DNA of 63,062 nucleotides, the filler included, from Octopus bimaculoides (taxonomy: Eukaryota): assembly GCF_001194135.2 (NCBI RefSeq). It is 6 parts of 6 records of this genome, joined end to end, with 100 filler letters (N's around TTAATTAATTAA, not from the genome) between each part and the next. Parts side by side here need not be neighbours in the genome. Positions count along the whole stretch, not along the records: positions 16,591 to 35,818 come from NC_069008.1; 5 more parts are not named here. The stretch is one strand, 5' to 3'. The notes beneath the pieces were generated by a model that saw only the letters and a program-made list of their open reading frames with translations, was not told where the DNA came from and ran no database searches. Of this stretch, positions 16,547 to 33,419 are shown in pieces (within the stretch, counting starts at the first letter, position 1; each line of letters starts with the position of its first letter). The position numbers and the translations under genes are program-made.

Positions 16547-16616
16547 NNNNNNNNNNNNNNNNNNNNNNNNNNNNNNNNNNNNNNNNNNNNATAAATATAT
16601 AGTTTTAGGGAAAAAG

Positions 16617-17072
16617 AACCAAGTTTCATGAACTCATCGATGAAAATCCACTATCACATATAGAAAAATTAATAATTAAAAGCACAATAAATGAGTATAA
16701 TATAATACAAAGTAAATATCATAAGATAAAGATAATAAAATGACTACACGTGTTTCATAACTAATTTTCAAATACAAAGGAAATTTAAATCGATTAGAAT
16801 CAATTAAAATTATCGAAAATAAATTCTATTCAAAAATACAGTTAATCGTCAGGTCTTAAATAGAACTGAAGTACGGAAAAATATGGATAAGTTCTATTTT
16901 TACTTTGCTAAATGATTTTCTACTATTTGAAAATAATATGTATTCTTGTTTTTTTATATTATTCATTTGGTTTTTTTTGAAACCAAGTTTCATGAACTCA
17001 TCGATGAAAATCCACTATCACATATAGAAAAATTAATAATTAAAAGCACAATAAATGAGTATAATATAATAC
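16617..17072 (+). repeat. Two identical 92-bp direct repeats (16617-16708, 16981-17072), end of a dispersed repeat family
   Basis: Exact duplication read by eye. A diverged inverted homologue lies at about 30885-30950, also next to (TA)n. Confidence 0.8.
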
Positions 17073-17074
17073 TT

Positions 17075-17107
<33 letters not shown>

Positions 17108-17217
17108 CTCAAACACACGCACACACATACATACACACACATACATACACACACACGTACACTTGTATCACACATTCGTACGTGCATATATGTATGTGTA
17201 TATGAAATATAATTGGT

Positions 17218-17286
<69 letters not shown>

Positions 17287-17317
17287 TGTGTGTGCGTACG
17301 CGTGCGAGCGCGACTGC

Positions 17318-17389
17318 GATCCGGAATACAATGGCTGTAAACAAATCACCTCATTGCTCAAAGAACTGAAGTTTGAACCGAGGAACTAA
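17318..17389 (+). pseudogene. Caspase C-terminal remnant (DPEYNGCKQITSLLKELKFEPRN*)
   Basis: Homologous to the last codons of the neighbouring caspases, with a 12-nt deletion. Truncated 5' by a (TG)n tract. Confidence 0.85.
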
Positions 17390-17483
17390 GATATTTAAGG
17401 TGCGGCATTCCTTAAATGAATATGGATCTTCTTACGGTTAGAATTTCTGATGCATGTGCATATTTTGAGTTGGAAGCCAGGAT

Positions 17484-17505
17484 TTGGATTTCGTTAACGC
17501 ATGCG
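17484..17505 (+). promoter_or_regulatory. Invariant 22-bp element upstream of caspase paralogue 1 (TTGGATTTCGTTAACGCATGCG)
   Basis: Identical at 20763-20784 and 23732-23753, about 90-100 bp before each ATG. It overlaps an NRF1-like CGCATGCG motif. The regulatory role is inferred. Confidence 0.5.
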
Positions 17506-17592
17506 TATTGATTGATAGCAATTTGAGAGGACAGAAATAATATATAATACACGGAACTACATTCAGCTCATCACATTATTACATTGACTACT

Positions 17593-18336
17593 ATGGCCGC
17601 TGGAAGTGCAAACGTTGGGACAGGCGTTCAGTCATCAACTGGCGATGATCTCAATAAATATTTCGCTGAATATGATATGAAAGATAAAACACGTGTTGCT
17701 TATATAGTCGACTCTGAGTGTTTATCAAACGATGCAATAGATTTTGGAAGGGCATTAAAACGTATTGGATTTAAATATGTCACTATTTCTAACATTTATG
17801 AAATGATGTGCAAAGATTGGAAAAAGTTTAACGAAGATAAACGTTATGGTAATATTGGTTGCTTTGTTTTTGTAATTATAAACTATGATCTTAAAAACGA
17901 TGGATTTGACGAAGTTGCACTAATTTCTAATCTGACAGCCGATAAGGGTCCATCTTTAGCAGGAGTACCTAAATTAATTTTTATTGAACCAAGTCGTGTA
18001 GATAGAGGACGCCACAAAACTGATGGACCTGAACCCGAACCTACGCAACGTAAAATCCCAATTACGGCAGATCTGTTGGTTTTTCGTTCGTGGTGGAATG
18101 AATTTCTGCCAATCAGCGGCGGACATGGAGATTCGCCGTTTATGAAAACATTAAGCAACGTTTTCATTAAGTATGGCACTGAATATGAAATCATGAAACT
18201 ATTAACAGCTGTCTCAAACTATATTGCCTCTTGTAAATTCCAAAGTTCGGATAATTCGGAAAACAATGGTTGTAAACAAATAACTCGGATCATGTCGACA
18301 TTGCTCAAAAAACTAAAGTTTGAACCGAGGAACTGA
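17593..18336 (+). CDS. Intronless caspase-3/7-like pseudo-protease (catalytically dead), 247 aa
   Basis: Caspase p20/p10 motifs (GVPKLIFI, KIPITADLLVF, IMSTLLKKLKF). QACRG is EPSRV, SHG is NYD, and both S1 arginines are absent. The frame is open and all indels versus the active paralogue are in-frame. Confidence 0.85.
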   Translation: MAAGSANVGTGVQSSTGDDLNKYFAEYDMKDKTRVAYIVDSECLSNDAIDFGRALKRIGFKYVTISNIYEMMCKDWKKFNEDKRYGNIGCFVFVIINYDLKNDGFDEVALISNLTADKGPSLAGVPKLIFIEPSRVDRGRHKTDGPEPEPTQRKIPITADLLVFRSWWNEFLPISGGHGDSPFMKTLSNVFIKYGTEYEIMKLLTAVSNYIASCKFQSSDNSENNGCKQITRIMSTLLKKLKFEPRN

Positions 18337-20469
18337 AATATTTCAAATGTGGATCCTTAAATAGAAATGCAGCTTCTTACGGTGAGAATTTCTGATGCAT
18401 CTACATATTATATGAAAAGAATATATTTTAGATATTCATACATCTAAAAATTCAAAGGGTGTATATTTTAAGAACTCATACATCTACAAATAAATACACT
18501 ATTTCACGTGTAATACCTACAACAGAAATTGATAAATAAATAAATGTAATATTTTTAACTAAATAATTACTAATACGATTGCAAACTTGATTTTAGTTTA
18601 ATTAATATCCTCTTACATTTTAAGATGCTTAACTAAAACTATTTCCTAAGAACGCCAGCGCTTTATTGGTACATTCTAAATTACAAACTAATTCTTCCCT
18701 CAGAAAATTGAACTAACATTCTTTTATATACAACTAAATATGAACAATATTAATATGTAGGCTATTTTATCCATGTGCTTTCATATATCGCTTGATTTGT
18801 AAAAGTTTATCTGCGAAAGAGAAATTATTTTTCTTGCTTTTCTTATTGCATTATACTATCTCAGCACCATTGCGTAATGTTTTTTTTTTCCAATGATTCT
18901 GCTATTTTTTTTACTCTGGTGGTTAATCTCACAATAAAATTTGTCTTTTATTAACATATAGTCTCTGAATTACCAACAACATAATAAAGTCTATCAGTTT
19001 TTACGTTGTTTCTTAATTTATTAAAATATATAAAGTGTGAATGAATGCTTAATTTATAAATGAATAAAGTTCTTTTCAAAAATTTCTTAAGTATTCCGAT
19101 GTTTTCATTATTGAAGTTTACGATTTTGCANNNNNNNNNNNNNNNNNNNNNNNNNNNNNNNNNNNNNNNNNNNNNNNNNNNNNNNNNNNNNNNNNNNNNN
19201 NNNNNNNNNNNNNNNNNNNNNNNNNNNNNNNNNNNNNNNNNNNNNNNNNNNNNNNNNNNNNNNNNNNNNNNNNNNNNNNNNNNNNNNNNNNNNNNNNNNN
19301 NNNNNNNNNNNNNNNNNNNNNNNNNNNNNNNNNNNNNNNNNNNNNNNNNNNNNNNNNNNNNNNNNNNNNNNNNNNNNNNNNNNNNNNNNNNNNNNNNNNN
19401 NNNNNNNNNNNNNNNNNNNNNNNNNNNNNNNNNNNNNNNNNNNNNNNNNNNNNNNNNNNNNNNNNNNNNNNNNNNNNNNNNNNNNNNNNNNNNNNNNNNN
19501 NNNNNNNNNNNNNNNNNNNNNNNNNNNNNNNNNNNNNNNNNNNNNNNNNNNNNNNNNNNNNNNNNNNNNNNNNNNNNNNNNNNNNNNNNNNNNNNNNNNN
19601 NNNNNNNNNNNNNNNNCATGGCTTGTGTGTGTGTAAGTGTGTGTGTGTTTGCGCGTCAAGTGCTTTACCATTAAGCTAAACTGCCCAGTAACGAATTCAT
19701 CTGTAATTTTAGAACTTATAAATTTAGTTTCATAAAGTTCGAGTCTCATGGCTGGCCGGTAGCGTATTTTTCTGCAATGTATGGATATTTTATCCTTCTC
19801 ACGCTATTTATTAGCATTATATTTTTTCAATTTTAAACTTTGAGAAGAAAACGCCCAATGTCACTCCTCAGACAATTTCCTGATTTCCAAAACTACAAAA
19901 CTCCGTATATTGTACGTATTGGGTGTGATCCTTTCAGCTAGCACAGATTTCCCCAGAAAAGTAGAAGGAAAAGATCAACCCCCTCACCAGAAAACTGGAT
20001 ATGCTAGAAATAAAAACTGAATGGGAAAATATTATTTCCTCGGCTTAACTACATCTTGTTTTTCGATTAACTCCAGCAAAGTACTCCAAGTTTAGTCTCT
20101 GGCCATATCCATCCCAGCACCATTCCACTGAAGAAAACTACACACACACGTACGCACACACAGATACACACACATTCGCACACACGCATACACACGCACA
20201 TTTTGGAAAAAGAAATTGTTTTGCGATAGAAACTGGAAGTGACATCAGAGACATCCTGTAATTCCATCTGAACTACATGTGATGTCATCGTCCCCGTAGT
20301 CATTATCATCGACGTGGTCGAAGAAAATATCGAGTTTGCAGTGTTATGTAGTGTTATCCGGGATGTTGATAGATACGACAACATTGAGAAGAGAGGATAC
20401 CTGCAAAATGTTCCGCACAGAAAAGCAGAGACAAATGAGGCATCCATAATGCAAAGTGTGGAAGTACAC

Positions 20470-20683
20470 GGAGGATTTATCTCTTGGCAGGGCAGTGACT
20501 TTTATGCAACGTTTAAGGAAATTTTTTAAGGAAATATGGCACTGAATATGATATCATGAAATTTTGAACCGCCGTCTCTATGTTGCCTCACTTGAATTCC
20601 GAAGTTCAGATAATCCGGAAAACAATGGCTGTAAACAAATAACCTCATTGCACAAAGAACTAAAGTTTCAACCGAGGAACTAA
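20470..20683 (+). pseudogene. Frameshifted caspase small-subunit remnant
   Basis: FMQRL..KYGTEYDIMKF..VASLEFRSSDNPENNGCKQITSLHKELKFQPRN* across frameshifts; carries the same 12-nt deletion as 17318-17389. Confidence 0.85.
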
Positions 20684-20762
20684 AATATTTCAGATGTAGC
20701 AACCTCAAATGAATATGGATCTTCTTACGGTGAGAATTTCTGACGCATGTGCATATTTTGAG

Positions 20763-20784
20763 TTGGATTTCGTTAACGCATGCG
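20763..20784 (+). promoter_or_regulatory. Invariant 22-bp upstream element, paralogue 2
   Basis: Identical to 17484-17505 and 23732-23753. Confidence 0.5.
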
Positions 20785-20947
20785 CATCAGTAGCAAACTT
20801 ACGTTAGTCAGATGGGAGGGCAGAAATAATATATCATACACGTAACTACATTCAGCTCATCACATTGTTATATTGATTACTATGGCCGCTGGAAGAGCAA
20901 ACGTTGAGACAAGCGATCAGTAGTATTCACCAATTGACGAAGCTCTC

Positions 20948-21646
20948 ATGGAATATTCCGTTGAATATGATATGAAGAATAAAACACATGTAGCTTATAA
21001 AGTCGACTCTGGGTGTTCATCATACGATGCAATAGATTTTGGAAGGGCATTAAAACGTATTGGATTTCATTATGTCCTTATTTATGACGATTTTAAAATA
21101 ATGTGCAAAGGTTTGGAAATTTTTAACGAAGATTGTAATATTGGTTGCTTTGTTTGTGCAATTACGAACCATAATCTTAAAAACGATGGATTTGACGAAG
21201 TTGCACTAATTTCTAATCTGACAGCCGATAAGTGTCGATTTTTAAAAGGAGTACCTAAATTAATTTTTATTGGACCAAGTCGTGTAGATAGAGGACACCA
21301 CGTAACTGATGGACCTGAACCCGAACCTACGCAACGTAAAATCCCAATTACGGCAGATCGGTTGGTTTTTCGTTCGTGGTGGAATGAATTTCTGCCAATC
21401 AGCGGCGGACATGGAGATTCGCCGTTTATGAAAACATTAAGCAACGTTTTCACTAAGTATGGCACTGAATATGAAATCATGAAACTATTAACAGCTGTCT
21501 CAAACTATATTGCCTCTTGTAAATTCCAAAGTTCGGATAATTCGGAAAACAATGGCTGTAAACAAATAACTCGGATCATGTCGACATTGCTCAAAAAACT
21601 GAAGTTTGTTCCGAGGAGGCAAAATATTTTAAATGTAGATCCTTAA
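20948..21646 (+). CDS. Second intronless caspase-like pseudo-protease, 232 aa (ancestral ATG at 20882 is cut off by an in-frame TAG at 20921-20923)
   Basis: Paralogue of 17593-18336. QACRG is GPSRV; His is retained (NHN) but Cys is Ser. It may be a young pseudogene or may initiate at 20948. Confidence 0.75.
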   Translation: MEYSVEYDMKNKTHVAYKVDSGCSSYDAIDFGRALKRIGFHYVLIYDDFKIMCKGLEIFNEDCNIGCFVCAITNHNLKNDGFDEVALISNLTADKCRFLKGVPKLIFIGPSRVDRGHHVTDGPEPEPTQRKIPITADRLVFRSWWNEFLPISGGHGDSPFMKTLSNVFTKYGTEYEIMKLLTAVSNYIASCKFQSSDNSENNGCKQITRIMSTLLKKLKFVPRRQNILNVDP

Positions 21647-23080
21647 ATAGAAATTAACATATAGTCTCTGAATTACCAACAACATAATAAAGTCTATCAG
21701 TTTTTACGTTGTTTCTTAATTTATTAAAATATATAAAGTGTGAATGAATGCTTAATTTATAAATGAATAAAGTGTGAATGAAGGCTTCATCTATGAATGA
21801 ATAAAGTGTTATTAAATGCTTCATCTATAATTTTGTTTGCCTGAAACGCAATATTTGGATGATGTTTACAATCCTATCATTTTCTTGTCATTTTCTTGCA
21901 GCTAATTGTTCGGCAATTTCCGTAAATAATTTCTTAATAATTTACCATCATTTCATATCCTGTTGAAGTCGATATTTGCTTTGAAGTCGTTGAGGTGGGC
22001 AAAATGAGACACTGAAGCTAGGAGCGAGTACACAAAAAGGCACCCGCATACTCACACGCACGCCTAGAATACAAATTTGCAANNNNNNNNNNNNNNNNNN
22101 NNNNNNNNNNNNNNNNNNNNNNNNNNNNNNNNNNNNNNNNNNNNNNNNNNNNNNNNNNNNNNNNNNNNNNNNNNNNNNNNNNTTTTTAGTTTTCAACATG
22201 AAACAAAACTAACATAAAGATGGAAAATAATGTTTATTTTTGTATATTTACATTAGAAAAGTTTTCTCCAATGTTTTTTGAATACAAAGTCCCAGAACAG
22301 ATCCTCACTATGGCACCGTGAATACTTTGAAATTATATTTCCGATTTCAAATAAACTACTTTGAATGTTATTGTAGCAAGGTTAAAGTGATTTCTTTTGT
22401 GATGTAAACCATTTACCATTTCTGCGGTGCCCCTACTTCCCTTGATACTCTAATCCTTATTTTGCTTAACGGTTAATCTAGCGCTGCCGATAATTTACAC
22501 TACAATCAGGAATTTACACTAGATTTAGGAATCTAATTATTTTATAATCAAATTTTTCTGCTAATAACAAAACTACATAAGAATCTTTCGTTCACACTTG
22601 AAATATTTTCATAGATTAAGACCTAACGTAAAAGCTAATATATTTTATTATTTCGTTGTCATTTCAGAGACTTTATGTTGTATATAAAACAATGTTAGTT
22701 CAATTTTCAGAGTGAAGAATTATTTTGAAATTTACAATATTCCTAGAAGGCACTGGTGTTCTAAGTAAAATTCATGGTAGGAAATAGTTTTAGTTAAACA
22801 TTAAAATGTTAGAGGTTATTTATTTAAGCAAATCAAGTTTGTAGTCACATGAAGAATTTTTTAGGTGCAGACATATTTATTTATCAATTTATGTTGTGGG
22901 TATTACATGTGAAAATATTTTATTTATTTGTAGGTGTATGAATTCCTAAAATATATACCTTTGCATTTGTGAATGTATGCGTGTCTAAAATATTTTTTTT
23001 TCGTATAATATACACATGCATCAGAAATTCTCACCGTAAAAATCTCCGTTTCTCTTTAAGGATCCCACACCGGAAATATT

Positions 23081-23351
23081 TTAGTTCTTTGGTTCAAACT
23101 TTAATCTTTTGAGCAATGTTGACATAATCTGAGGCATTTGTTTACAGCCACTGCATTCCGGATTATCCGGATTTTTGAATTCAAAAGAGGCAACACGTTT
23201 ACAGACAGCAGTTAACAATTTCATGATTTCATAGTCAGTGCCATATTTCACCAAAATTTTACTTAAAGTCTGCATAAAACACGAACCGTTACGTTTATGC
23301 ATGATTGACGGATGTTTATTATACGACGAATGGAAAACCAACATATCTGCC
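23081..23351 (-). CDS. 3' part of an inverted caspase-3/7-like paralogue (5' part presumably in the gap at 23352-23451)
   Basis: Open frame ADMLVFHSSYNKHPSIMHKRNGSCF...IMSTLLKRLKFEPKN*, running into Ns. Its 3' flank mirrors the 3' flank of the 23851 gene. Confidence 0.8.
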
Positions 23352-23540
23352 NNNNNNNNNNNNNNNNNNNNNNNNNNNNNNNNNNNNNNNNNNNNNNNNN
23401 NNNNNNNNNNNNNNNNNNNNNNNNNNNNNNNNNNNNNNNNNNNNNNNNNNNAGATTCTTATGTAGTTCTGCTATAAGCAGAAAATTTTGTTTGTAAAATA
23501 ATTAAATTCCTAAATCTAGTGTAATTTATCAGTTGCACTG

Positions 23541-23695
23541 GATTGCATTGTTGGCACTCCGTCGCTTACGACGTCGAGGGTTCCAGTTGATCCGATCAAC
23601 GGAACAGCCTGCTCGTGAAATTAACGTGCAAGTGGCTGAGCACTCCACAGACACGTGTACCCTTAACGTAGTTCTCGGGGATATTTCACCGAAAA
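23541..23695 (-). mobile_element. 3' fragment of tRNA-derived SINE, family C
   Basis: ttggcactccgtcgcttacgacgtcgagggttccagttgatcc... is nearly identical to 62175-62310. Confidence 0.85.
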
Positions 23696-23731
23696 TTATT
23701 TTCAGCTATGCTTTCACTTTGAAGCCAAGAG

Positions 23732-23753
23732 TTGGATTTCGTTAACGCATGCG
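23732..23753 (+). promoter_or_regulatory. Invariant 22-bp upstream element, active caspase
   Basis: Identical to the copies upstream of paralogues 1 and 2. Confidence 0.5.
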
Positions 23754-23850
23754 CATTAAATAATAATCTGATTTTAATCGGGTGAGATGACGGGAATGAT
23801 ATATCTAACAGGAACTAGATTCAGCTTGTCGCATTGCTGCATCGACTACT

Positions 23851-24620
23851 ATGGACGCTGTAAGTGTAAATGGTAGTACAGGCGCTCAGTTCCATTTACC
23901 AACTGAGGAAGATTTAATGAAATGTTTCGAAAAATATGACATGACACATGAAAAGCGAGGTGTTGCCTACATCTTCAACATGAAAAATTTCAGTGACCCA
24001 AAACTTCAAACTCGTCACGGCTCATCGAAAGACACAAAACATTTAAAAAGGGCTTTAGAAAATCTTGGTTTTCATGAAGATGATATCAACATATGTAAAG
24101 ATTTTACAGCCAAAGAAATGCTCGGGGCTTTGGAAGAATTTGACCTAAACAATCCTAAAATTAATATTGATTGCTTTGTTTGTGCAATTCTGAGTCATGG
24201 TGGTAAAAACGATATCATATGTGGATACGAAGGTAAAGTTGAGCTAGACGAATTGCTTTCTTGCCTGAGACCCGATCGCTGTCCATCTCTAACAGGAGTA
24301 CCTAAATTAATCTTTATTCAAGCATGTCGTGGAAGTAAGATTGATGTTGGAGTCGAAAAAAACGATGCTGCGGAAACAGAATCTGAAAGAAAGTCACCCA
24401 AAATTCCAATTATGGCAGATATGTTGGTTTTCCATTCGTCGTATAATAAACATCCGTCAATCAGGAATGAAGACAAAGGTTCGTGGTTTATGCAGACTTT
24501 AAGTACAGTGTTGATGGAACATGGCACTGACTATGAAATCATGAAATTGTTAACTGCTGTCTGTAAACGTGTTGCCTCTTTTGAATTCAAAAATCCGGAT
24601 AATCCGGAATGCAGTGGCTG
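23851..24620 (+). CDS. Intronless effector caspase (caspase-3/7-like) with an intact active site; the last ~21 codons fall in the gap
   Basis: RHG (S1 Arg, 24013), SHG (His, 24196), QACRG (Cys, 24325) and SIRNEDKGSWF (second S1 Arg, 24463) are all present. Short prodomain; Asp in the inter-subunit linker (EKND/A). Confidence 0.95.
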
Positions 24621-25182
24621 NNNNNNNNNNNNNNNNNNNNNNNNNNNNNNNNNNNNNNNNNNNNNNNNNNNNNNNNNNNNNNNNNNNNNNNNNNNNNNNN
24701 NNNNNNNNNNNNNNNNNNNNNNNNNNNNNNNNNNNNNNNNNNNNNNNNNNNNNNNNNNNNNNNNNNNNNNNNNNNNNNNNNNNNNNNNNNNNNNNNNNNN
24801 NNNNNNNNNNNNNNNNNNNNNNNNNNNNNNNNNNNNNNNNNNNNNNNNNNNNNNNNNNNNNNNNNNNNNNNNNNNNNNNNNNNNNNNNNNNNNNNNNNNN
24901 NNNNNNNNNNNNNNNNNNNNNNNNNNNNNNNNNNNNNNNNNNNNNNNNNNNNNNNNNNNNNNNNNNNNNNNNNNNNNNNNNNNNNNNNNNNNNNNNNNNN
25001 NNNNNNNNNNNNNNNNNNNNNNNNNNNNNNNNNNNNNNNNNNNNNNNNNNNNNNNNNNNNNNNNNNNNNNNNNNNNNNNNNNNNNNNNNNNNNNNNNNNN
25101 NNNNNNNNNNNNNNNNNNNNNNNNNNNNNNNNNNNNNNNNNNNNNNNNNNNNNNNNNNNNNNNNNNNNNNNNNNNNNNNNNN

Positions 25183-25462
25183 CAGACACGTGTACCCTTG
25201 ACTTAGTTCTCGGGGATATTCAGCGTGACACTGTGACAAGGCTGACCCTTTGAATTACAGGCACAACAGAAACAGGAAGTAAGAGTGAGAGAAAGTTGCG
25301 GTGAAAGAGTACAGCAGGGTTCGCCACCATCCCCTGCCGGTGCCTCGTGGAGCTTTAGGTGTTTTCGCTCAATAAACACTCACAACACCCAGTCGGGGAA
25401 TCGAAACCGCGATCCTATGACCGCAAGTCCGCTGCCCTAACCACTGGGCCATTGCGCCTCCA
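25183..25462 (-). mobile_element. tRNA-derived SINE, family C
   Basis: Matches 62275-62548; the head reads gtggaggcgcaatggcccagtggttagggcagcg on the minus strand. Confidence 0.85.
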
Positions 25463-26042
25463 CAGCACTGGATTAACCACTAAGCAAAATAGTCATGTGC
25501 TTAGGGTATCAAGGGAAGTGGAGACACTAGAAAAATGGTAAATGGTTTACATCACAAAAGAAATCACTTCAACCTTGTTACAGCAACATTCAAAGTGGTT
25601 TATATGATCGGAAATATATTTTCGAAGAGTTCATGTCGCCGTAGTGAGTATCCGATCGAGGACTATGCAATTAAAAAACGCAGGAGAAAACTTTTCCAAT
25701 GTAAATAAAGTGGTTGTACACAGAAATAAACATTATTTTTTCATATTACTGGTAGTTTTGTTTCATTTCAAATATAGACATTATTTTATAGTTTGTTATT
25801 GTTTATATTTCGAATTACATATATATGGGGATACCAAACAGCCTTCTCTCATCACATAGATGAAGAGGCTAATCTAAAACTGAGGCTGAATGACGTCCTC
25901 TCCTCATACCGACACTCTGGAATTCAATACCGAAGGATCGCTCTTATTTTCATACAAAATTGTTTTCGTATTGTTTTTATAAAAAAATAACAAATAATTC
26001 ATACTGAAAACTTCATAACCTTTTAGTTATATTTCATTCGTA

Positions 26043-26300
26043 AGGCAGCGAGCTGGCAGGATTGTTAGCACGCCGGACGAAATGCTTAGCGGCATTTCGT
26101 CTGTCGCTACGTTCTGACTTCAAATTCCGCCGAGGTCGACTTTGATTTTCATCCTTTCGGGGTCGATAAATTAAATACCAGTAAGACACTGAGGTCGATG
26201 TAATCGACTAGGCCCCCTCCCCACAAATTCGATGTCTTGTGTCTCCAGTAGAAAAGAATCGTTAGCACGCCGGGCAATATGCTTAGCGGCGTTTCTTCTG
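26043..26300 (+). mobile_element. SINE, family B, plus a partial internal duplication
   Basis: ggcagcgagctggcaggattgttagcacgccgg...; gaatcgttagcacgccggg is repeated at about 26256. Confidence 0.8.
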
Positions 26301-26305
26301 CCTTT

Positions 26306-26443
26306 AAAAAAATGGATGCTGATTGCAAGGCCTTTGACGAAAGGCCGCTCAAAATTCCAATTATTGCCGATATGTTGTTTATTTGATATTCGTCTTTCAG
26401 GATTAAAGAGGAAGGCTCGTAGTTCATCTAAACTATGTTAGCA
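26306..26443 (+). pseudogene. Decayed caspase linker/small-subunit remnant
   Basis: KKMDADCKAFDERPLKIPIIADMLFI*YSSFRIKEEGS*FI*TMLA aligns to EKNDAAE..SPKIPIMADMLVFHSS..EDKGSWFMQTLS, with three in-frame stops. Confidence 0.75.
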
Positions 26444-27985
26444 GCAGCAGTCTACATCACTGCGATCACCACCACCACCACCACCACCACCACCACAACC
26501 ACCACCACCACCACAACGTGGCTATGTGTCGCAGCAAAAGTTACTTACACCACCAGCTTGGCATCATTAGGAGGGTGACTGCTGTTACTATTAATATAAC
26601 GCCGTCACATCATCCAGCAGCAACAGTTGTAAGTTTGTTTACATCAACGCTTAGACAGTCGGCAACATTTACTGAGTCACTGTCGCTGGTAACATAAAAT
26701 TGAGGAATGGTTTAACGGAACCTGTATTAACTAGACATTTCCGAGACTACTTTGCTTCTGAGGATTTGCCTTTCCGCCTGAAGTATACAGGTTTTGTGAA
26801 ACTTGCCGCCATTGTCAGAAGCTTTCCTGGTGGATTAAATGTGTGTGTGTGTGGATATACATAGATAGATACATAACGTTGACCACAGCACATTGAATGT
26901 CCGCGTTAGTGGTCAACGTTATATATAAAAATATACTTTAATCCCTTGAGATTGCAGATATTATTTCTGAATCTCTTTGATTCTTTAAATGTGCTAGCTT
27001 CCTGGTAATTAATCGATATTAATTAATATATGATTTTTTACCCTATGTTTTAATAGATAGATAGATAGATAGATAGATACATANNNNNNNNNNNNNNNNN
27101 NNNNNNNNNNNNNNNNNNNNNNNNNNNNNNNNNNNNNNNNNNNNNNNNNNNNNNNNNNNNNNNNNNNNNNNNNNNNNNNNNNNNNNNNNNNNNNNNNNNN
27201 NNNNNNNNNNNNNNNNNNNNNNNNNNNNNNNNNNNNNNNNNNNGGGGCCGAGCGAATGAGGAAGAAATTAATGTAGGTTATGTACTTCGAATATTTTCTA
27301 CTTAAATCAGTCAGGCTAAATAAAGGGGTTTTTTTTTTTTCCATCTATTGTCTGCTTTGAGCTTTTGGTAACCGAAATTGGTTAGTTAAAGAATATGGGA
27401 GTCGACTCTCATATAGGAACTCGTACCGAAAGATCGCCGAAAAATCTATATCACCCCACTCCCGGAGCCTCGGGAAGCTTTAGGTGTTTTTGCTCAATAA
27501 ACACTCACCACTGGCCCATTGTGTCTCCACCATGGACAACCGTATGCTGTCAACAACAAAACTAACACGGTCGGGAGTAGCAGTGGTGCCGACGATGACA
27601 ATAACGACAACAACTACCACAATGGCAACACCGGGAACGAACACACAGCAGCAGCATCAAGGGCTGAGGGGTTGGGGCTGAGGAGAAAGAGACACGGCTG
27701 CTAAAAATTATGATACACACACACACACACACACACACAGCACACATACACTCACACATACACACACACACACTCAAGGGCACAAACGCATGCGCACATA
27801 AAGATACACATCTTAGAAGAACAGAATGGAGTGGAGCAAGAACACACACGGAAACGTAAAGTGTCGCTGAAGAGGTCACAGATGTGTGACGAAAGATTTC
27901 CGGACAATGGACAAGCGTCAAAATAATAAAAATAACAGTAATAAACGAGTGAAGAAAACTATATAGTGCGTGTGCTTATTTGGCA

Positions 27986-28076
<91 letters not shown>

Positions 28077-29479
28077 GAAATGGCCGTCCCGAAGTACAAG
28101 AATATTTTAAGATTTTTGAAATATATCGCTTACCTCTCTTTATTATTTACATACCACACTCTGATCGGTTCTCTCCCCTTAACGGGGAACATTACTCTCC
28201 CTTCTATTTCTTAGTAAATTCTCTTTCTTTCCCTTTCTTACAACGAAAGCAACAGTAGGTGGCAGCACCACCAGCCTCTTGTCAAATTTTCCACGAAAAA
28301 TGCCATATCTATACAAAGTATCGCTAAAACATTTACCAGCTTCTTCTTGGCCATAGAATACTTCATCCTTGATCAACCACAAATATTCTACAAAGCCCAC
28401 ATTCCAGTCGTGTTCCCTGCAGTGTAAACCGCAGTGAAATAGCCGTCACAAGTAGCAAAAGCTGAAGGACTACTGCAATAAGTGTATGACTCTGAGAGGG
28501 GAATTTGTTGAATAAAATCATAATTAATTGATCTTTCTGCATTTCCTTTTGCTCAAAGCCAGGAACTTTTCACCACCCCTCGTATGTATTCATGCATGAA
28601 TGCATGCATGTATGTATGTATGTATGTATGCATGCAAAACAAAAGATGAGTTGCCCCACCTTGGGGCCAATAAGACATAAGAAAGGCAAAGTAATTTATT
28701 CTTTCACTTGTTTCAGTCATTTGACTGCGGCCATGCTGACATTTTGTTTAAATTTTTTGTTGAATAAAATCTATTGAAAAAAAGCCACAATAATTTTGCA
28801 CAAACCTTATATATATATTTTCCAGCTTCTTAACCTCCGTATTTTTCCACATGTATTAAAAAAATCAAATTGAGTATGATTATTTTTTAGTATTTGAACT
28901 ATTTCTGTTATTTTCGCAATTTATCCAGTACAATGCTTAAATAAGTAAATAGTATTTTCCTAAACAATAGATCCACCTATTTCGGTTAGTGACACATTCA
29001 CGAATATACCAACACTAGCGCCACTGAGGGTCATATTCTCTGTGAATGCACAAAAGCTATTTTCAGAGTTATTTACTTTGAATTGTTATTATCTCATATC
29101 TGATTAGCCTGTTATTACGTAACATGCTTCACAATTTTAGTATACATACTTTATTAGTATTTCCCCCTATGTTCTATATACTGTGGGAATGTATTAAACC
29201 CCTTTTCGGGGCTACTTTATTTGAATTCTTACTATCAGGTAATTAATTTCATGTTATTACATAACTGACTTCACAATTTGGGTATTCATAACTTACTGGG
29301 AATTCCTAAAAACAAGATCCTGTGTAAGACAGTTCGGTATTCTCAATAAATGCACAAAAGCCGTTTTAAGGGCTACATACTTTGTATTGTTACTGATTAG
29401 TGAAACAATTATGAGAACAGAACCGCTTTCCCAGGATTACCAGGTACGTCAACTAGTATATATGTATATATATATATAT

Positions 29480-29890
29480 ATACACAAAAAGACCCATCAA
29501 GCCAAGTGAAAACGTAGTCATGAGTAATGACGGTGTCATGTAACTGGCACGCAAAAAGCACCTTTCAAGCGCTGGGCCTAACAGAGGTGATGATATATGA
29601 CAAAGATCTTTGTCAATATGCCATGCTTGAGTGGAAGACCCATCAAGCCAAGTCAGAATTGTAATGATGGCAGATAATGGTGTCATGAAACTGGCACCCA
29701 TGCTGGTGGCACAGAATTGCACCCATTACACTCTCAGAGTGTTTGGTGTTAGGAAGGGCATCCAGCCTTAGAAACAATGCCAAATCAAACTGGAGTCTAG
29801 TGCAACCCGTCAGCTTACCAGCCCTGGTCAAATTGGCCAACCCATGCCAGCATGGACAACAGATGCTAAATGATGATAATGATGGTGATA
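29480..29890 (+). mobile_element. Dispersed repeat, family D (SINE-like, GAT-repeat tail)
   Basis: cccattacactctcagagtgtttggtgttaggaagggcatccagc...catgccagcatggacaacagatgctaaatgatgat; related copies at 34165, 35290 and 62925. Confidence 0.75.
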
Positions 29891-30001
29891 CACACATACA
29901 CACACAGAGTAAATTTCAAAAATAAATAGAGTCAATCATTTTTTTGAAGGATTTATTTTGAGAAAGAAAATAATGCTATCTGATGCATTTAAATAATTCA
30001 T

Positions 30002-30460
30002 TTAGGATTTAGTTGACGTTTCTTCTGAAGGTCTTAATGTTTTAACCCATTTGGCTCTCTCTACCACCTTATTTGTCCTATCCTTTGGATATCTGTGGGT
30101 CAAAGAGGGTTTCCTTCTTGCTACTTTACCGTAGTAGCCAAGTTGATGAAGATACCTCACAGAAGTTCTCCGACTCTTTTGGAGTTGCTCTGCAACATCA
30201 GCTGCCTTACAATGGGGATTGTTTTCAACAATCTGTTCAACAGTCTGAAGACATTTATCAGAGGGCCCAGGTCGACCTGAGCGGGAGGCAGTTGATTCCT
30301 TTCCTTCGCTGGTGAACTGTACAATCACTCTGTTCACTGTGGCAAGAGGAATTCCAAGGCTTTGTGCAATCTTACGCTGGCTACGTCCACTATCAGACTG
30401 ACCCACGATACGTCCTCTTTGAAAATCTGACAATTCTTTCGCGTCTGGTGTTCGTGGCAT
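30002..30460 (-). CDS. Truncated Tc1-like transposase (DNA-binding domain only), copy 1, 152 aa
   Basis: [36 protein letters not shown] are Tc1 N-terminal motifs; no DDE domain. Confidence 0.8.
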
Positions 30461-30774
30461 GACCAGTTGCTATAAACAATTAATATACTGTAATCTGAAA
30501 TGAAAAATAATAGTACTTTTAAGAAGTGGGGGCGAGGCAATGTATTCATTTTTAAGAAGTCTGTTTATATATGAGGATGTGCTAAAGAGACAATACTGGA
30601 AGATCAGTTAATAATGATTTCATTCAACATATTCTCCTCTCAGATTCACACACACTCTGCAGTGGTCCTTCAGTTTTTCTAAGCACTGTAAAGGAACTTG
30701 GAAAATTAGGGCTCCAACCAGGCCTTTCACAATATCTTTAAAGCCAGGAACTTTTCAGTATCCCCTCCTATGTG

Positions 30775-30808
<34 letters not shown>

Positions 30809-30940
30809 CACATAGGAGGGGATACTATTAGGGACAAAATCCAAAATTACAGGTAAAAAACTCAATTAAAATCAATTTATAAAAAATTAATATAGTGGAT
30901 TTTCATCAATGTGTTCTTGAAAATTGGTTATTTTCCCTAA

Positions 30941-30982
<42 letters not shown>

Positions 30983-31155
30983 TATAATTGTAAACATAAT
31001 TATAATAAGGGGGTCAACTAATTGCTTCACCACATTCCGAATTTAGAAATAGCAGTTAAAAACTCCTTTTCTACTATGGTAAGAATCTCCCAGACGGCAA
31101 TACACTCTTTTACGAAGGCAAAAAGAGAAACAATGAATCCACATGACTCCGATTA

Positions 31156-31217
31156 GCCACATACGGGTTTCGAGATTAAAGTACATTTAATTACTTATTT
31201 CTCATCATCAGTGTAGC
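31156..31217 (-). ncRNA. Near-intact minimal type I hammerhead ribozyme (Penelope-type)
   Basis: gctaca-CTGATGA-t-GAGA...AAGTA(loop)TACTT...TCTC-GAAAC-cc-GTA-tgtggc: 6-bp stem I, bipartite stem II, 2-bp stem III and a GUA cleavage triplet. Confidence 0.65.
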
Positions 31218-33419
31218 ATTTCAAATATTAAATTTGAAAGTGCTGGGGTTAAATATGTGCACGATAGAGCGTCATCGAGCGAAAGATAGTTGAGCTCTGA
31301 TTGGCTGTATGCAAATGAGTTCATAACTGGGGTCCGGAACGCTCGTGGGGAAAAAACTACGCGTCCCGCTTGTCTTCCACGGGCCTATCCAGTATTTATG
31401 TTATTTAACAGCAAGGTAACTTATGTTGCTGTACTAGTCCCCCTTAATTTTATTTAGTTTTTTAATATCCCTAAACTGAAAAATTACCCCTTTGTGTATA
31501 TTCTAGATATCTTTTCAATTATGCTAATATTTAATAAAATACTTCCTTCTCCCAACATCGTTTCCTTTTAGAATACATATTTTTTAAACGACACTATACA
31601 AAAAGTATGCTTTCGAGAATGTAGATTACGTAATGTAGATGTTTGCGATAGAAAAATCAAGGGGGAAAAATATGAAAATTCCCAACAGATTGTCAATATT
31701 TGGGGGAGAGGAGACTAAAAGATTCATCCAAAATACAATTACTTTTTTAATATTGTCAACACAATCGTTATCTACAACCTCAAAAAATTATTTCTGCAAA
31801 GCGTTATTTACAAATACAACAAATTTGAGAAAATTTCGCGAAAACAAATTCGTGGGGCACTAAAGTGTAGAAATACCTTTAGTTGTCGCTGTTAAATTGA
31901 AAGATATCCTGCCAGTGGGATTCGGTTGAAAACTGTAAATAAGTCAGTCGTGTATATAACTAATGACGTTAATTGGGTGTTCCCATTTAATTAGTTGTTG
32001 AATAAAAAAAAAGGGGGAGAAATGAAAGCGTAAAACATGCGATCACTAAAATAGAAGTGTAATGGAGGAATAAGACAGAAAGTGGATTTATTGCATTTTC
32101 ATTGGTCAGTTCGGGTCACGTGATAGGACGTAACCATGCTGCTGGTGAAGGTTCGTGTGTTTACATAAACACTAACGTATGTGCTTGCGTACGTGTGTGT
32201 GAGTATATTTATGTTTCTGCGGTGAACGCCGTTTAAGTCACGATGTGAGTGAGGCAAAAGTTCGTTGAGTATAGGAACGAATTCAATATGCAGGAAGAAG
32301 TCAGTTCTTAGATATCCTCTTATTTATCATAGTCCTCTGTGCAGGCGCAATGGCCTAGTGGTTAGCGCAGCGGTCGTAGGATCGCGGTTTCGACTCATTT
32401 CGGAGATCATGCCAATATTTATGAGTAGAAGCCCATCAAATTTAATTTTTTCACATTAAATACCTATATAACCGTGATCTACACTCTGAAAGGTATTTAT
32501 AGGAAATTTCATTCAAAAAAATTACCAATTTTTCTAAAAATTATAAATAATAAAAGCCGTCTTGTGTGAATTTTCCGAAACTCCTCNNNNNNNNNNNNNN
32601 NNNNNNNNNNNNNNNNNNNNNNNNNNNNNNNNNNNNNNNNNNNNNNNNNNNNNNNNNNNNNNNNNNNNNNNNNNNNNNNNNNNNNNNNNNNNNNNNNNNN
32701 NNNNNNNNNNNNNNNNNNNNNNNNNNNNNNNNNNNNNNNNNNNNNNNNNNNNNNNNNNNNNNNNNNNNNNNNNNNNNNNNNNNNNNNNNNNNNNNNNNNN
32801 NNNNNNNNNNNNNNNNNNNNNNNNNNNNNNNNNNNNNNNNNNNNNNNNNNNNNNNNNNNNNNNNNNNNNNNNNNNNNNNNNNNNNNNNNNNNNNNNNNNN
32901 NNNNNNNNNNNNNNNNNNNNNNNNNNNNNNNNNNNNNNNNNNNNNNNNNNNNNNNNNNNNNNNNNNNNNNNNNNNNNNNNNNNNNNNNNNNNNNNNNNNN
33001 NNNNNNNNNNNNNNNNNNNNNNNNNNNNNNNNNNNNNNNNNNNNNNNNNNNNNNNNNNNNNNNNNNNNNNNNNNNNNNNNNNNNNNNNNNNNNNNNNNNN
33101 NNNNNNNNNNNNNNNNNNNNNNNNNNNNNNNNNNNNNNNNNNNNNNNNNNNNNNNNNNNNNNNNNNNNNNNNNNNNNNNNNNNNNNNNNNNNNNNNNNNN
33201 NNNNNNNNNNNNNNNNNNNNNNNNNNNNNNNNNNNNNNNNNNNNNNNNNNNNNNNNNNNNNNNNNNNNNNNNNNNNNNNNNNNNNNNNNNNNNNNNNNNN
33301 NNNNNNNNNNNNNNNNNNNNNNNNNNNNNNNNNNNNNNNNNNNNNNNNNNNNNNNNNNNNNNNNNNNNNNNAGAATTCTTCAAACTTTATGAATTAATAT
33401 GACCACTGTTAGTAAAACG

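What the first reader, a model, noticed from the sequence alone, without database searches (positions are those of the whole stretch)
17318..26443. Compact array of intronless caspases: one armed enzyme surrounded by dead or re-specified paralogues (candidate caspase-decoy system)
Seen: seven caspase-3/7-like sequences in 9 kb - one intact enzyme (23851), two open-frame catalytically dead copies (17593, 20948), one inverted copy lacking an S1 Arg (23081) and three decayed remnants (17318, 20470, 26306). Known: dead caspase homologues act as regulators (cFLIP with caspase-8; C. elegans CSP-2/CSP-3 with CED-3), and pathogen inhibitors (baculovirus p35, poxvirus CrmA) target the active-site groove. 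Inference: a lineage-specific birth-and-death module pairing an effector caspase with heterodimerising inhibitors or inhibitor decoys. I cannot verify from here whether it has been described.
Basis: partly seen in the sequence, partly recalled or inferred. Interest (0 to 1): 0.9.

Follow-up and report, generated by a model that had tools for sequence, protein, structure and literature searches.

The report
Octopus caspase cluster with dead copies
This piece of the Octopus bimaculoides genome is part of a tandem cluster of single-exon caspase genes; one catalytically dead lineage has kept its reading frame and evolved unusually fast in two octopus species, so it is probably a working pseudo-caspase rather than junk, although assembly gaps blur the "intact" and "inverted" copies.

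Summary
The piece is Octopus bimaculoides chromosome CM046628.1. It is part of a cluster of at least 60 kb with three more intact single-exon caspases just outside the window.

The two dead copies (17593, 20948) belong to one old lineage with an orthologue in O. sinensis. All three share the same codon-sized deletions and lack the catalytic His and Cys and both S1 Arg. They are not neutral pseudogenes. Between species the coding sequence diverges faster than its flanks (19.8% against 11.8-15.8%). Interior indels are all in frame, and staying stop-free by chance has P of about 0.004. dN/dS is 2.1-2.9 (three-taxon test p=0.001; non-coding controls about 0.9). Fold, C-terminal strand and a promoter block shared with the catalytic copies are retained. 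A selected pseudo-caspase fits best; its partner and mechanism are inferred.

Caveats:
- The "intact" enzyme is cut by a gap at codon 256, and its RefSeq C-terminus is an artefact.
- The "inverted" copy sits on a 1.17-kb contig between two gaps. It equals the active gene except for a 57-nt patch, so it may be the same gene's missing 3' end or an allele.
- dead2 has an early in-frame stop.
- An active-site inhibitor decoy is unlikely.

The parts
17318..17389 (+). Remnant R1: the last ~24 codons plus stop of a former upstream array unit, abutting a (TG)n microsatellite
   Evidence: tblastn E=2e-5 to 4e-5 and family HMM E=4.9e-4. The same remnant with the same microsatellite breakpoint lies upstream of the O. 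sinensis dead gene, at L001 9646-9718.
17490..17505 (+). Conserved promoter-proximal block TTCGTTAACGCATGCG (NRF-1-like palindrome), 103 nt upstream of the dead1 ATG, followed by a TATA-like AATATATAATAC
   Evidence: There are exactly 3 matches in the window, one upstream of each of dead1, dead2 and the active copy, with 0 expected by chance. The block lies upstream of nearly every paralogue in both species; P0002 carries a variant.
17593..18336 (+). dead1: 247-codon single-exon pseudo-caspase (= P0026). It lacks catalytic His (NYD) and Cys (EPSR), and both S1 Arg (the L1 segment is deleted; L3 reads PISGGHGDSPF)
   Evidence: Pfam PF00656 E=5.5e-14; alignments. AlphaFold2 model pLDDT 73, pTM 0.75. 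Foldseek top hits are caspase-6, -7 and -3 with TM 0.67-0.75. The O. sinensis orthologue is syntenic. dN/dS is 2.1-2.9.
20501..20683 (+). Remnant R2: about 60 C-terminal codons with one frameshift (20517-20564 in one frame, 20552-20680 in another)
   Evidence: Family HMM E=3.5e-8 and 4.5e-3, tblastn, and 75-77% DNA identity to the 3' ends of other copies.
20769..20784 (+). Conserved promoter block of dead2
20882..21646 (+). dead2 (= P0027). The ancestral ATG is at 20882, an in-frame TAG sits at 20921-20923, and a 232-codon frame is open from ATG 20948. His motif NHN, Cys motif GPSR, S1 Arg lost
   Evidence: DNA alignment to the dead1 unit, 87% over 1,066 nt. Pfam E=8.1e-13.
22183..23351 (-). 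1,169-bp contig between two 100-N gaps. It carries the last 89 codons plus stop of a P0002-type caspase (23081-23351) and its 3' flank. The L3 loop lacks the canonical S1 Arg
   Evidence: HMM E=6e-43. Its reverse complement is collinear with the O. sinensis P0002 3' end and flank at 87.7%. It overlaps the active gene by 207 nt: 50 identical, then a 57-nt patch with 14 mismatches, then 100 identical.
23738..23753 (+). Conserved promoter block of the active copy
23851..24620 (+). Catalytically competent-looking caspase-3/7-like gene, codons 1-256 (SHG, QACRG, both S1 Arg), cut by the gap at 24621
   Evidence: Pfam E=2.8e-48. It is 100% identical to XP_014783524.1 over these codons and 87.6% DNA identity to O. 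sinensis P0002. dN/dS is 0.60 against P0002 and 0.34 against a Logan relative.
26297..26380 (+). Remnant R3: 28 codons matching the linker and first p10 strand (…KIPIIADMLF). Part of this region is used by RefSeq models as a false terminal exon of the active gene
   Evidence: HMM E=0.002, tblastn E=0.027. The P0001 C-terminus RLKRKARSSSKLC equals the end of the ORF 26232-26441.

Best explanation
The window is part of an Octopus-specific tandem cluster of single-exon, prodomain-less (effector-type) caspase-3/7-like genes. The cluster grew by DNA-level tandem duplication of units made of promoter, coding sequence and short 3' flank.

Before O. bimaculoides and O. sinensis split, one lineage lost the catalytic His and Cys. 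It also lost both S1 arginines and the L1 loop, the hairpin after the His, and three residues after the Cys motif. This lineage is sister to, and lies head-to-head with, the P0029/c52 caspase. It has been kept as a translated gene and evolves under positive selection. It is therefore a pseudo-caspase, not a pseudogene. In O. bimaculoides it was duplicated again, giving dead1 and dead2.

Shown: loss of catalytic residues, single origin, preserved frame, dN/dS above 1, retained caspase fold, retained family promoter block.

Inferred: it acts through protein-protein contacts with catalytic paralogues. Two forms are plausible. It could heterodimerise through the conserved p10/C-terminal strand, as FLIP(L) does with caspase-8 or CSP-3 with CED-3. 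Or it could compete as a cleavable substrate, because an Asp is retained in the inter-subunit linker. The likeliest partner is its fast-evolving neighbour P0029/c52 or the P0002-type enzyme at 23851. The three short remnants are inert leftovers of former array units.
For: Identity and context:
- The locus is O. bimaculoides CM046628.1.
- The wider cluster holds P0004, P0033 and P0029, all single-exon.
- The O. sinensis cluster holds three intact copies plus one dead copy, P0028.

Single origin:
- All three dead genes share the same in-frame deletions and residue losses.
- Their N-termini match P0029/c52.

Selection, from the orthologous alignment 17223-19050 against L001 9551-11355:
- Coding divergence is 19.8%, against 11.8% downstream and 15.8% upstream.
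- Coding indels are 6, 3 and 15 nt, plus a 1-nt indel four codons before the stop.
- The flanks have 15 indels, of which only 2 are multiples of three.
- Simulated neutral substitution keeps the frame open with P=0.003-0.005. P(at most 1 frame-breaking indel)=0.0013.

dN/dS:
- Pairwise codon maximum likelihood gives 2.15-2.94, p=0.006-0.02.
- The three-taxon fit gives 2.39, LRT 10.9, p=0.001.
- Flanks read as pseudo-codons give a median of 0.90, range 0.43-1.50. The same CDS read in its five wrong phases gives 0.60-1.42.
- Differences by codon position are 57/53/32, or 45/47/24 without CpG sites. GC by codon position is unchanged between the species.
- Catalytic paralogues give 0.34-0.60, and P0029/c52 gives 0.91.

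Structure and promoter:
- The dead1 model has pTM 0.75 and matches caspase-6, -7 and -3 at TM 0.67-0.75.
- The strand ...STLLK.L.F, KIPITADLLVF, GVPKLIFI and a linker Asp (HKTD/G, HVTD/G, HAVD/A) are conserved.
- The promoter block is invariant upstream of dead and active copies.
- dead1 and dead2 are held as proteins in NCBI and EukProt.
Against: - There is no expression or protein evidence for the dead clade. No transcript-derived contig encodes P0026, P0027 or P0028. The O. sinensis orthologue's accession was not found in the O. vulgaris skin-mucus proteome files (some of them cut when stored), which list other caspases.
- No O. vulgaris protein falls in the dead clade's 90% cluster. The gene may be unannotated or broken there.
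- Only three sequences from two species support the selection tests, and the p-values are 0.001-0.02.
- The near-identical 3' halves of dead1 and dead2 suggest gene conversion, so the two are not fully independent.
- dead2 has an early in-frame stop and may already be dying.
- dead1 and dead2 sit on separate small contigs, so a mis-scaffolded divergent haplotype cannot be excluded.
- dN/dS above 1 in the sense frame is arithmetically linked to dN/dS below 1 in the codon-aligned antisense frame (0.60). That frame is full of stops, however.
- Heterodimerisation or competition is inferred by analogy only.
Confidence: 0.55

Rival explanations
1. The dead copies are ordinary non-functional pseudogenes from a birth-and-death gene family. 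Their open frames are luck.
For: - The family clearly sheds copies: three remnants, further fragments at L003 1235-1643 and L001 2753-3083, and the early stop in dead2.
- dN/dS is not below 1.
- No expression evidence was found.
- For the young dead1/dead2 pair alone, an open frame is unremarkable (P=0.12).
Against: - Across the species split, chance retention of the frame has P of about 0.004 for stops and 0.0013 for indels.
- Interior coding indels are all multiples of three, against 2 of 15 in the flanks.
- The neutral value dN/dS=1 is rejected upward (p=0.001), while the non-coding controls sit at about 0.9.
- The coding sequence diverges faster than its flanks, which neutrality does not predict.
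Confidence: 0.08
2. The dead copies are decoys that soak up pathogen-encoded caspase inhibitors or proteases. This is the reader's second option, and an arms race would explain the fast evolution.
For: dN/dS above 1 with a preserved frame is the usual signature of host-pathogen conflict. The sister caspase P0029/c52 is also fast-evolving, with dN/dS 0.91 and 60% amino-acid identity.
Against: Mechanism-based inhibitors such as p35 and CrmA need the catalytic Cys and the S1 pocket (established knowledge). The dead clade has lost His, Cys and both S1 Arg, and has deleted the L1 segment and the post-His hairpin, so the groove is not mimicked. No pathogen partner is known. An exosite-binding effector is not excluded.
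Confidence: 0.12
3. The dead lineage has taken on a new binding or scaffolding role unrelated to regulating caspases, and positive selection reflects that new function.
For: The whole active-site region has been trimmed while the core fold is kept. Pseudoenzymes often gain non-classical roles; FLIP(L) also acts independently of caspases (PMC7586951).
Against: The most conserved parts are those that caspases use to pair (the C-terminal strand and the p10 core), plus the linker Asp. The gene has stayed next to its sister caspase in both species. Neither point is decisive.
Confidence: 0.15
4. Part of the 'array' is an assembly artefact. The inverted copy is not a separate inverted gene. It is the mis-oriented, misplaced 3' end of the active gene, or of its other haplotype or a very recent duplicate, and it belongs in the gap at 24621.
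For: - The contig (22183-23351) is only 1,169 bp and lies between two 100-N gaps.
- Reverse-complemented, it is collinear with exactly the part of O. sinensis P0002 (3' end and flank) that the active gene lacks. The sequence after the gap continues collinear further downstream.
- The 207-nt overlap is gapless and identical for 50 and 100 nt on either side of a 57-nt patch.
- That patch looks like a gene-conversion tract: the active version is closest to P0004 (51/57) and the inverted version to O. sinensis P0002 (52/57).
Against: Fourteen mismatches in 57 nt prove that two distinct sequences exist in the sequenced animal. Further downstream, identity between the two loci is only 78% (22198-22486 against 25766-25463), which argues for a second locus rather than an allele.
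Confidence: 0.5

Closest known systems
FLIP(L) / CFLAR, the vertebrate pseudo-caspase paralogue of caspase-8 and -10 (PMC7586951)
   Same: A caspase-fold paralogue without the catalytic Cys, encoded next to its active paralogues. The inactivating changes are conserved. It is cleavable in the linker between the pseudo-large and pseudo-small subunits, and it acts by heterodimerising with the active enzyme.
   Different: FLIP(L) has tandem DEDs and belongs to the initiator branch. The octopus dead copies have no prodomain and derive from an effector-type, single-exon, Octopus-specific family. They have also deleted the loops around the active site. No heterodimer has been shown here.
[quoted passage not shown] 2008, 2009, as cited in PMC5088569)
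   Same: Lineage-specific, catalytically inert caspase homologues without long prodomains that regulate a paralogous executioner-type caspase.
   Different: By my own knowledge, CSP-3 is essentially a small-subunit mimic. The octopus proteins keep both p20-like and p10-like halves. They are not related by descent.
Aedes aegypti CASPS18, a decoy caspase that enhances its neighbouring paralogue CASPS19 (Bryant et al. 2010; recalled from my own knowledge, not retrieved here)
   Same: An effector-type caspase paralogue lacking catalytic residues. By my recollection it arose by recent local duplication next to an active paralogue and modulates that paralogue.
   Different: It is in a different phylum and arose independently. 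The direction of any effect in octopus (enhancing or inhibiting) is unknown.
Other degenerate members of the same Octopus expansion, found here
   Same: - P0043 (XP_014774641.2, 'caspase-6', O. bimaculoides, another chromosome) has lost His and the QACRG motif.
- P0038 (Logan contigs) has lost His and has Cys to Ser.
- P0011 and P0016 have QASRG and EASRG.
- O. sinensis c52, P0002 and P0003 lack the L3 Arg.
   Different: These are separate lineages, not members of the dead1/dead2/P0028 clade. That clade is a single cluster in an exhaustive profile search: 410 bits, against 160 or fewer for everything else.

Membership tests
Peptidase C14A caspases (effector, caspase-3/7-like) | Caspase p20/p10 domain (Pfam PF00656) and caspase fold | tested here: met
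   The active copy, dead1, dead2 and the inverted fragment all pass the Pfam cut-off. The dead1 model matches caspase-6, -7 and -3 at TM 0.67-0.75.
Peptidase C14A caspases (effector, caspase-3/7-like) | Catalytic dyad: His in SHG and Cys in QACxG | tested here: met
   This row is for the copy at 23851 only: ILSHGG and IQACRGS are present. Its last ~21 codons are unread.
Peptidase C14A caspases (as active enzymes): dead1, dead2, P0028 | Catalytic dyad and S1 pocket (Arg in L1, Gln before Cys, Arg in L3) | tested here: not met
   The motifs read NYD/EPSR, NHN/GPSR and NQD/EAVE. The L1 Arg segment is deleted and the L3 Arg is replaced.
Peptidase C14A caspases | Asp-directed proteolytic activity | not testable with these tools
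   This needs DEVD-ase or other substrate assays on recombinant protein.
Pseudo-caspases (functional, catalytically dead caspase homologues: FLIP(L), CSP-2, CSP-3 and CASPS18 kind) | Catalytic residues lost while the caspase fold is retained | tested here: met
Pseudo-caspases | Maintained by selection (not a pseudogene) | tested here: met
   The frame is kept across two species (P about 0.004 for stops and 0.0013 for indels). Interior coding indels are in frame. dN/dS is significantly different from 1. This holds for dead1 and P0028. It is inconclusive for dead2, which has an early stop.
Pseudo-caspases | Expressed as a protein | tested here: inconclusive
   The promoter block and TATA-like element are conserved. 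No transcript-derived contig or peptide was found. The same resources also lack the active gene's full-length product, so their sensitivity is poor.
Pseudo-caspases | Binds or modulates an active caspase | not testable with these tools
   This needs co-expression, pull-down and activity assays.
cFLIP/CFLAR orthologues | Tandem death-effector domains N-terminal to the pseudo-caspase domain | tested here: not met
   Only about 28 residues precede the domain, and Pfam finds PF00656 alone.
Processed (retroposed) pseudogenes | Intronless copy without its own promoter, dispersed, decaying neutrally | tested here: not met
   The copies are intronless, but they lie in tandem, each with the family's conserved upstream block, and they do not evolve neutrally. 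A single ancient retroposition that founded the whole family is not excluded.

The most novel reading that the evidence does not exclude
The dead caspase and its head-to-head neighbour P0029/c52 form a co-evolving pair, in which a positively selected pseudo-caspase tunes or guards a fast-evolving executioner-type caspase in octopus innate immunity. In the same cluster, short gene-conversion patches swap the L3 specificity loop between versions with and without the S1 arginine (SIRNEDKGSW against SIMHKRNGSC), generating alleles or paralogues with different substrate specificity.
Probability: 0.2. Interest if true: 0.75.

Novelty: new member of a known kind. Interest (0 to 1): 0.5.

Why it matters
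Pseudo-caspases are few. FLIP(L) is called the only one in humans (PMC7586951), and almost all functional knowledge comes from FLIP(L) and the worm CSP proteins.

An independently evolved, effector-type pseudo-caspase in a cephalopod would be a natural experiment on how dead proteases regulate live ones. It is conserved across species and shows dN/dS above 1. It would also give a handle on cell-death or immune regulation in a lineage where this is nearly unstudied.

The Octopus expansion contains several separate losses of catalytic or specificity residues, so repeated pseudoenzyme birth can be studied within one family.

Practically, the RefSeq models here need correction. The active gene has a false C-terminus, the O. 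sinensis dead gene has a truncated N-terminus, and the 'caspase-7' names imply activity.

Tried and rejected
- **Neutral-pseudogene reading.** Rejected for dead1 and P0028 by the stop and indel statistics and by dN/dS.
- **dN/dS above 1 as a method artefact.** I checked F3x4 and F1x4 codon frequencies with kappa estimated, non-coding flanks read as pseudo-codons, the five wrong phases, CpG removal and base composition by codon position. None explains it. An early optimiser run that returned omega=1.00 was a start-point failure and was rerun.
- **An antisense gene driving the pattern.** Antisense ORFs exist at 17883-18194, 21082-21480 and L001 10273-10530. They cover only a third to a half of the CDS, and a shorter antisense ORF (24318-24527) also occurs in the active copy. 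Their phases give omega 0.72-1.42. I read them as a by-product.
- **Independent retropositions for each copy.** Rejected, because the upstream block and the 3' flank are duplicated with the CDS.
- **More dead-clade members elsewhere.** Two word-indexed searches and one exhaustive profile search found only P0026, P0027 and P0028.
- **Expression evidence.** Cluster membership, encoding contigs and the skin-mucus proteome supplements gave nothing for the dead clade.
- **Literature.** Four searches found no description of octopus dead or intronless caspases.
- **O. vulgaris orthologous locus.** It could not be reached, because the dead gene lies more than 10 kb from any annotated neighbour.

Full report
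**1. What the piece is**

The usable piece (16591-35818) is Octopus bimaculoides chromosome CM046628.1 from assembly GCA_001194135.2. Locus L003, fetched through the dead1 protein, has the same sequence and the same gap pattern (window coordinate minus 7592). The active ORF is 100% identical to XP_014783524.1 'caspase-like [Octopus bimaculoides]' over its 256 readable codons.

**2. The observation**

| Copy | Coordinates | Strand | HMM E-value |
|---|---|---|---|
| active | 23851-24620 | + | 3e-125 |
| dead1 | 17593-18336 | + | 2e-88 |
| dead2 | 20948-21646 | + | 9e-84 |
| inverted p10 part | 23081-23351 | - | 6e-43 |
| remnant R2 (one frameshift) | 20517-20680 | + | 3.5e-8 |
| remnant R1 | 17318-17389 | + | 5e-4 |
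| remnant R3 (marginal) | 26297-26380 | + | 0.002 |

Pfam confirms PF00656 for the four large ones. Alignment with relatives shows the following.
- The active copy has SHG, QACRG and both S1 arginines (…TRHGSS…, …SIRNEDKGSWF…).
- dead1 reads NYD and EPSR; dead2 reads NHN and GPSR.
- Both dead copies have lost the L1 arginine through an 11-residue deletion. In both, the L3 arginine is replaced (PISGGHGDSPF).
- The inverted fragment reads SIMHKRNGSCF at L3.

**3. Gaps, tested first**

- Gap 19131-19616 lies between gene units.
- Gap 24621-25182 cuts the active ORF after codon 256. The apparent continuation to 25206 is only X's followed by unrelated residues. No caspase C-terminus follows 25183.
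- The RefSeq and EukProt models (P0001 of 267 aa, P0030 of 268 aa) bridge this gap by splicing into the remnant near 26400. Their tail RLKRKARSSSKLC is the end of ORF 26232-26441. That C-terminus is an artefact. Orthologues end in …CKQMPQIMSTLLKRLKFEPRN.
- Gaps 22083-22182 and 23352-23451 are 100-N spacers around a 1,169-bp contig that holds the inverted fragment.

**4. The inverted copy**

Reverse-complemented, the contig is collinear with the 3' end and 3' flank of the O. sinensis gene P0002: 22625-23351 matches L002 15740-15018 at 87.7%, and 22183-22362 matches L002 16874-16690. The active gene matches the 5' flank and CDS of the same gene: 23685-24610 matches L002 14288-15214 at 87.6%. The sequence after the gap continues collinear further downstream.

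The two contigs overlap by 207 gapless nucleotides. Fifty are identical, then a 57-nt patch has 14 mismatches (12.5 non-synonymous), then 100 are identical. Within the patch, the inverted version is closest to O. sinensis P0002 (52/57). The active version is closest to the paralogue P0004 (51/57).

So two versions of one gene exist that differ only in the L3 specificity loop, probably through a gene-conversion patch. Whether they are alleles, very recent duplicates, or one gene mis-scaffolded cannot be decided without reads. The 78% identity further downstream argues for a second locus.

In the P0002 lineage the version without the Arg appears to be the older state, because O. sinensis P0002 and the Logan protein P0003 share it.

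**5. Wider context**

The window shows only part of the cluster.

In O. bimaculoides, P0004 (-), P0033 (+) and P0029 (-) lie 12-50 kb upstream. All are intact and single-exon. A minus-strand fragment lies at L003 1235-1643.

In O. sinensis (CM016888.1) the order is P0002 (-), c73 (-), c52 (-), a fragment (-), then the dead gene P0028 (+). All the full copies have single-exon coding sequences.

The dead clade's N-terminus and overall similarity tie it to P0029/c52, which is its head-to-head neighbour in both species.

Each unit carries the same upstream block, …GGATTTCGTTAACGCATGCGCAT… (an NRF-1-like palindrome), about 100-113 nt before the ATG, followed by a TATA-like AATATATAATAC. The window has exactly three matches, one per large plus-strand copy, with none expected by chance. 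The block lies upstream of nearly every paralogue in both species; P0002 carries a variant.

The remnants R1 and R2 are the 3' ends and 3' flanks of former preceding units. R1, with the same microsatellite breakpoint, is also present in O. sinensis. The family therefore expanded by DNA-level tandem duplication of compact units, not by repeated retroposition.

**6. Are the dead copies pseudogenes?**

The dead1 locus aligns collinearly with the O. sinensis dead locus over 1.85 kb. The O. sinensis frame is in fact open from an upstream ATG (L001 9911, 239 codons). The RefSeq model starts at an internal Met.

| Region | Divergence | Indels |
|---|---|---|
| CDS | 19.8% | 6, 3, 15 nt, plus 1 nt four codons before the stop |
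| upstream flank | 15.8% | part of the 15 flank indels |
| downstream flank | 11.8% | part of the 15 flank indels |

Only 2 of the 15 flank indels are multiples of three.

Neutral simulation of the observed number of substitutions leaves the frame stop-free in 0.3-0.5% of trials. At the flank indel rate, P(at most one frame-breaking indel) is 0.0013.

dN/dS results:

| Test | dN/dS | Significance |
|---|---|---|
| Nei-Gojobori, pairwise | 2.0-2.5 | bootstrap 95% CI above 1 |
| Codon ML, pairwise | 2.15-2.94 | p=0.006-0.02 |
| Three-taxon fit | 2.39 | LRT 10.9, p=0.001 |
| Flanks as pseudo-codons | median 0.90 (0.43-1.50) | control |
| Same CDS, five wrong phases | 0.60-1.42 | control |

Differences fall 57/53/32 on codon positions 1/2/3, or 45/47/24 without CpG sites. 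GC by codon position is identical in the two species. By contrast, catalytic members give 0.34-0.60, and P0029 against c52 gives 0.91.

The dead lineage is therefore a protein under selection to stay translatable and to change. For dead2 alone the evidence is weak: it has an early TAG (20921-20923), its open frame runs only from 20948, and its retention P is 0.12. The near-identity of dead1 and dead2 in the 3' half suggests gene conversion.

**7. What is kept and what is lost**

Five deletions are shared by all three dead genes:
- the L1 segment with the S1 Arg;
- four residues in the p20 region between the L1 segment and the His motif;
- the hairpin after the catalytic His;
- three residues after the Cys motif;
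- two residues in the linker.

These conserved elements remain: VAY.VD, IGCF, LTADK, GVPKLIFI, KIPITADLLVFRSW, SPFMK, YGT.YEI.KLLT, the C-terminal strand STLLK.L.F, and a linker Asp (HKTD/G, HVTD/G, HAVD/A).

AlphaFold2 gives a caspase-like alpha/beta fold (pLDDT 73, pTM 0.75). Confidence is low only at the N-terminus, the linker and L3. Foldseek returns caspase-6, -7 and -3 at TM 0.67-0.75.

**8. Mechanism**

Shown: this is a selected, fold-retaining, catalytically dead paralogue with the family promoter.

Inferred: it acts on catalytic paralogues in one of two ways. It could form half-dead heterodimers through the conserved p10/C-terminal strand, as FLIP(L) does with caspase-8 (PMC7586951). 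Or it could compete for activation or cleavage, as described for caspase-like decoys and for CSP-2 and CSP-3 (PMC5088569).

An active-site inhibitor decoy is unlikely, because the groove has been dismantled. An arms-race driver acting on another surface remains possible.

**9. Novelty**

An exhaustive profile search of 1.84 billion representatives finds the dead clade as a single cluster (410 bits), followed by catalytic octopus paralogues at 160 bits or fewer. Word-indexed searches find only P0026, P0027 and P0028.

Other, independent degenerate members exist in the expansion: P0043, P0038, and the Cys-to-Ser members P0011 and P0016. Four literature searches found no description of them.

This is a new member of a known kind (pseudo-caspases), with unusually clear selection evidence but no functional or expression data.

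**10. Verdict**

Interest is moderate at 0.5. Confidence is about 0.8 that the dead lineage is a selected protein and about 0.4 that it regulates paralogous caspases by pairing or competition, giving 0.55 for the combined statement.

Noticed in passing
window 17490-17505, 20769-20784, 23738-23753; also L001 9812, L002 2267 and 9937, L004/L005/L006 ~9900: An invariant block TTCGTTAACGCATGCG(CAT), an NRF-1-like palindrome, lies about 100-113 nt upstream of the ATG of nearly every caspase in the cluster, dead or active, in both species (P0002 has a variant). A TATA-like element follows it. One orphan copy (L004 6585-6600 = L006 4681-4696) has no annotated caspase beside it.
   Followed up: partly
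window 24464-24520 against 23245-23301 (minus strand): A 57-nt patch covering the L3 specificity loop is the only difference between the active gene and the inverted fragment over 207 nt. It has 14 mismatches, nearly all non-synonymous. The active version resembles paralogue P0004 and the other resembles O. sinensis P0002, which looks like a short gene-conversion tract that restores the S1 Arg.
   Followed up: yes
window 23851-24620 plus ~26400-26441: RefSeq and EukProt models of the active gene (P0001, P0030) splice across the assembly gap into a decayed remnant, which gives a false C-terminus (…RLKRKARSSSKLC).
   Followed up: yes
L001 9911-10630 (O. sinensis): The RefSeq model XP_029653346.2 (209 aa) starts at an internal Met. 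The frame is open from an upstream ATG and gives 239 aa with an N-terminus homologous to dead1 and c52.
   Followed up: yes
window 18950-19070 against 21653-21773: A stretch of 121 nt is 100% identical between the dead1 and dead2 units, close to a contig end. The dead2 unit lacks about 600 nt of 3' flank that dead1 and O. sinensis share. This could reflect recent conversion, collapse or mis-scaffolding.
   Followed up: no
window 20501-20612 against 17223-17322: Remnant R2 is longer than R1, yet R1's microsatellite breakpoint is shared with O. sinensis and dead1 and dead2 are equidistant from the O. sinensis gene. The order of the duplication, truncation and conversion events is unexplained.
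   Followed up: partly
L005 10001-10924 (P0029) and L002 2366-3190 (c52): The catalytic sister and neighbour of the dead clade is itself very fast-evolving. It shows 60% amino-acid identity between species and dN/dS 0.91, against 0.34-0.48 for other catalytic members. c52 lacks the L3 Arg.
   Followed up: partly
proteins P0043, P0038, P0011, P0016 (elsewhere in Octopus genomes or Logan contigs): Further independent degenerate members of the same expansion exist. P0043 ('caspase-6', O. bimaculoides) has no His or QACRG motif. P0038 has no His and has Cys to Ser. P0011 and P0016 read QASRG and EASRG.
   Followed up: partly
proteins P0037 (Graphocephala atropunctata), P0039 (Thrips palmi): These insect proteins have two caspase domains in one chain, one with an intact Cys motif and one with a degenerate motif (QAREE, QARRG). 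They amount to fused active-plus-dead pairs.
   Followed up: no
window 30002-30460 (-) and 34660-35118 (-); repeat 29870-30527 against 34531-35184: Two 152-aa ORFs have Tc1/mariner-type transposase HTH domains (HTH_29, HTH_SB, HTH_Tnp_Tc3_2) and lie in a 659-nt repeat that is 95.6% identical. The same element lies downstream of P0002 in O. sinensis (L002 19357-19815).
   Followed up: partly
window 26091-26209: A unit of about 119 nt has at least 10 copies (86-88% identity) in two arrays of the O. sinensis locus (L002 8659-9560 and 17702-18749). It is a local satellite next to remnant R3.
   Followed up: no
window 17883-18194 (-), 21082-21480 (-), 24318-24527 (-); L001 10273-10530 (-): Antisense ORFs of 69-132 codons overlap the linker/p10 region of dead and active copies alike. 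They are probably a compositional by-product.
   Followed up: partly
window 16946-17320, 27715-27773, 27986-28074, 26467-26514: There are many microsatellites: (CA)n and (TG)n directly abutting remnant R1, plus (AC)n, (AAT)n and (CAC)n.
   Followed up: no
PMC11431876 supplements: The O. vulgaris skin-mucus proteome lists 13 accessions under the InterPro caspase-domain term, several differing in abundance between wild, aquarium-kept and senescent animals. The dead-clade accession A0A6P7TX29 was not found in the held supplement files, some of which were cut when stored.
   Followed up: partly
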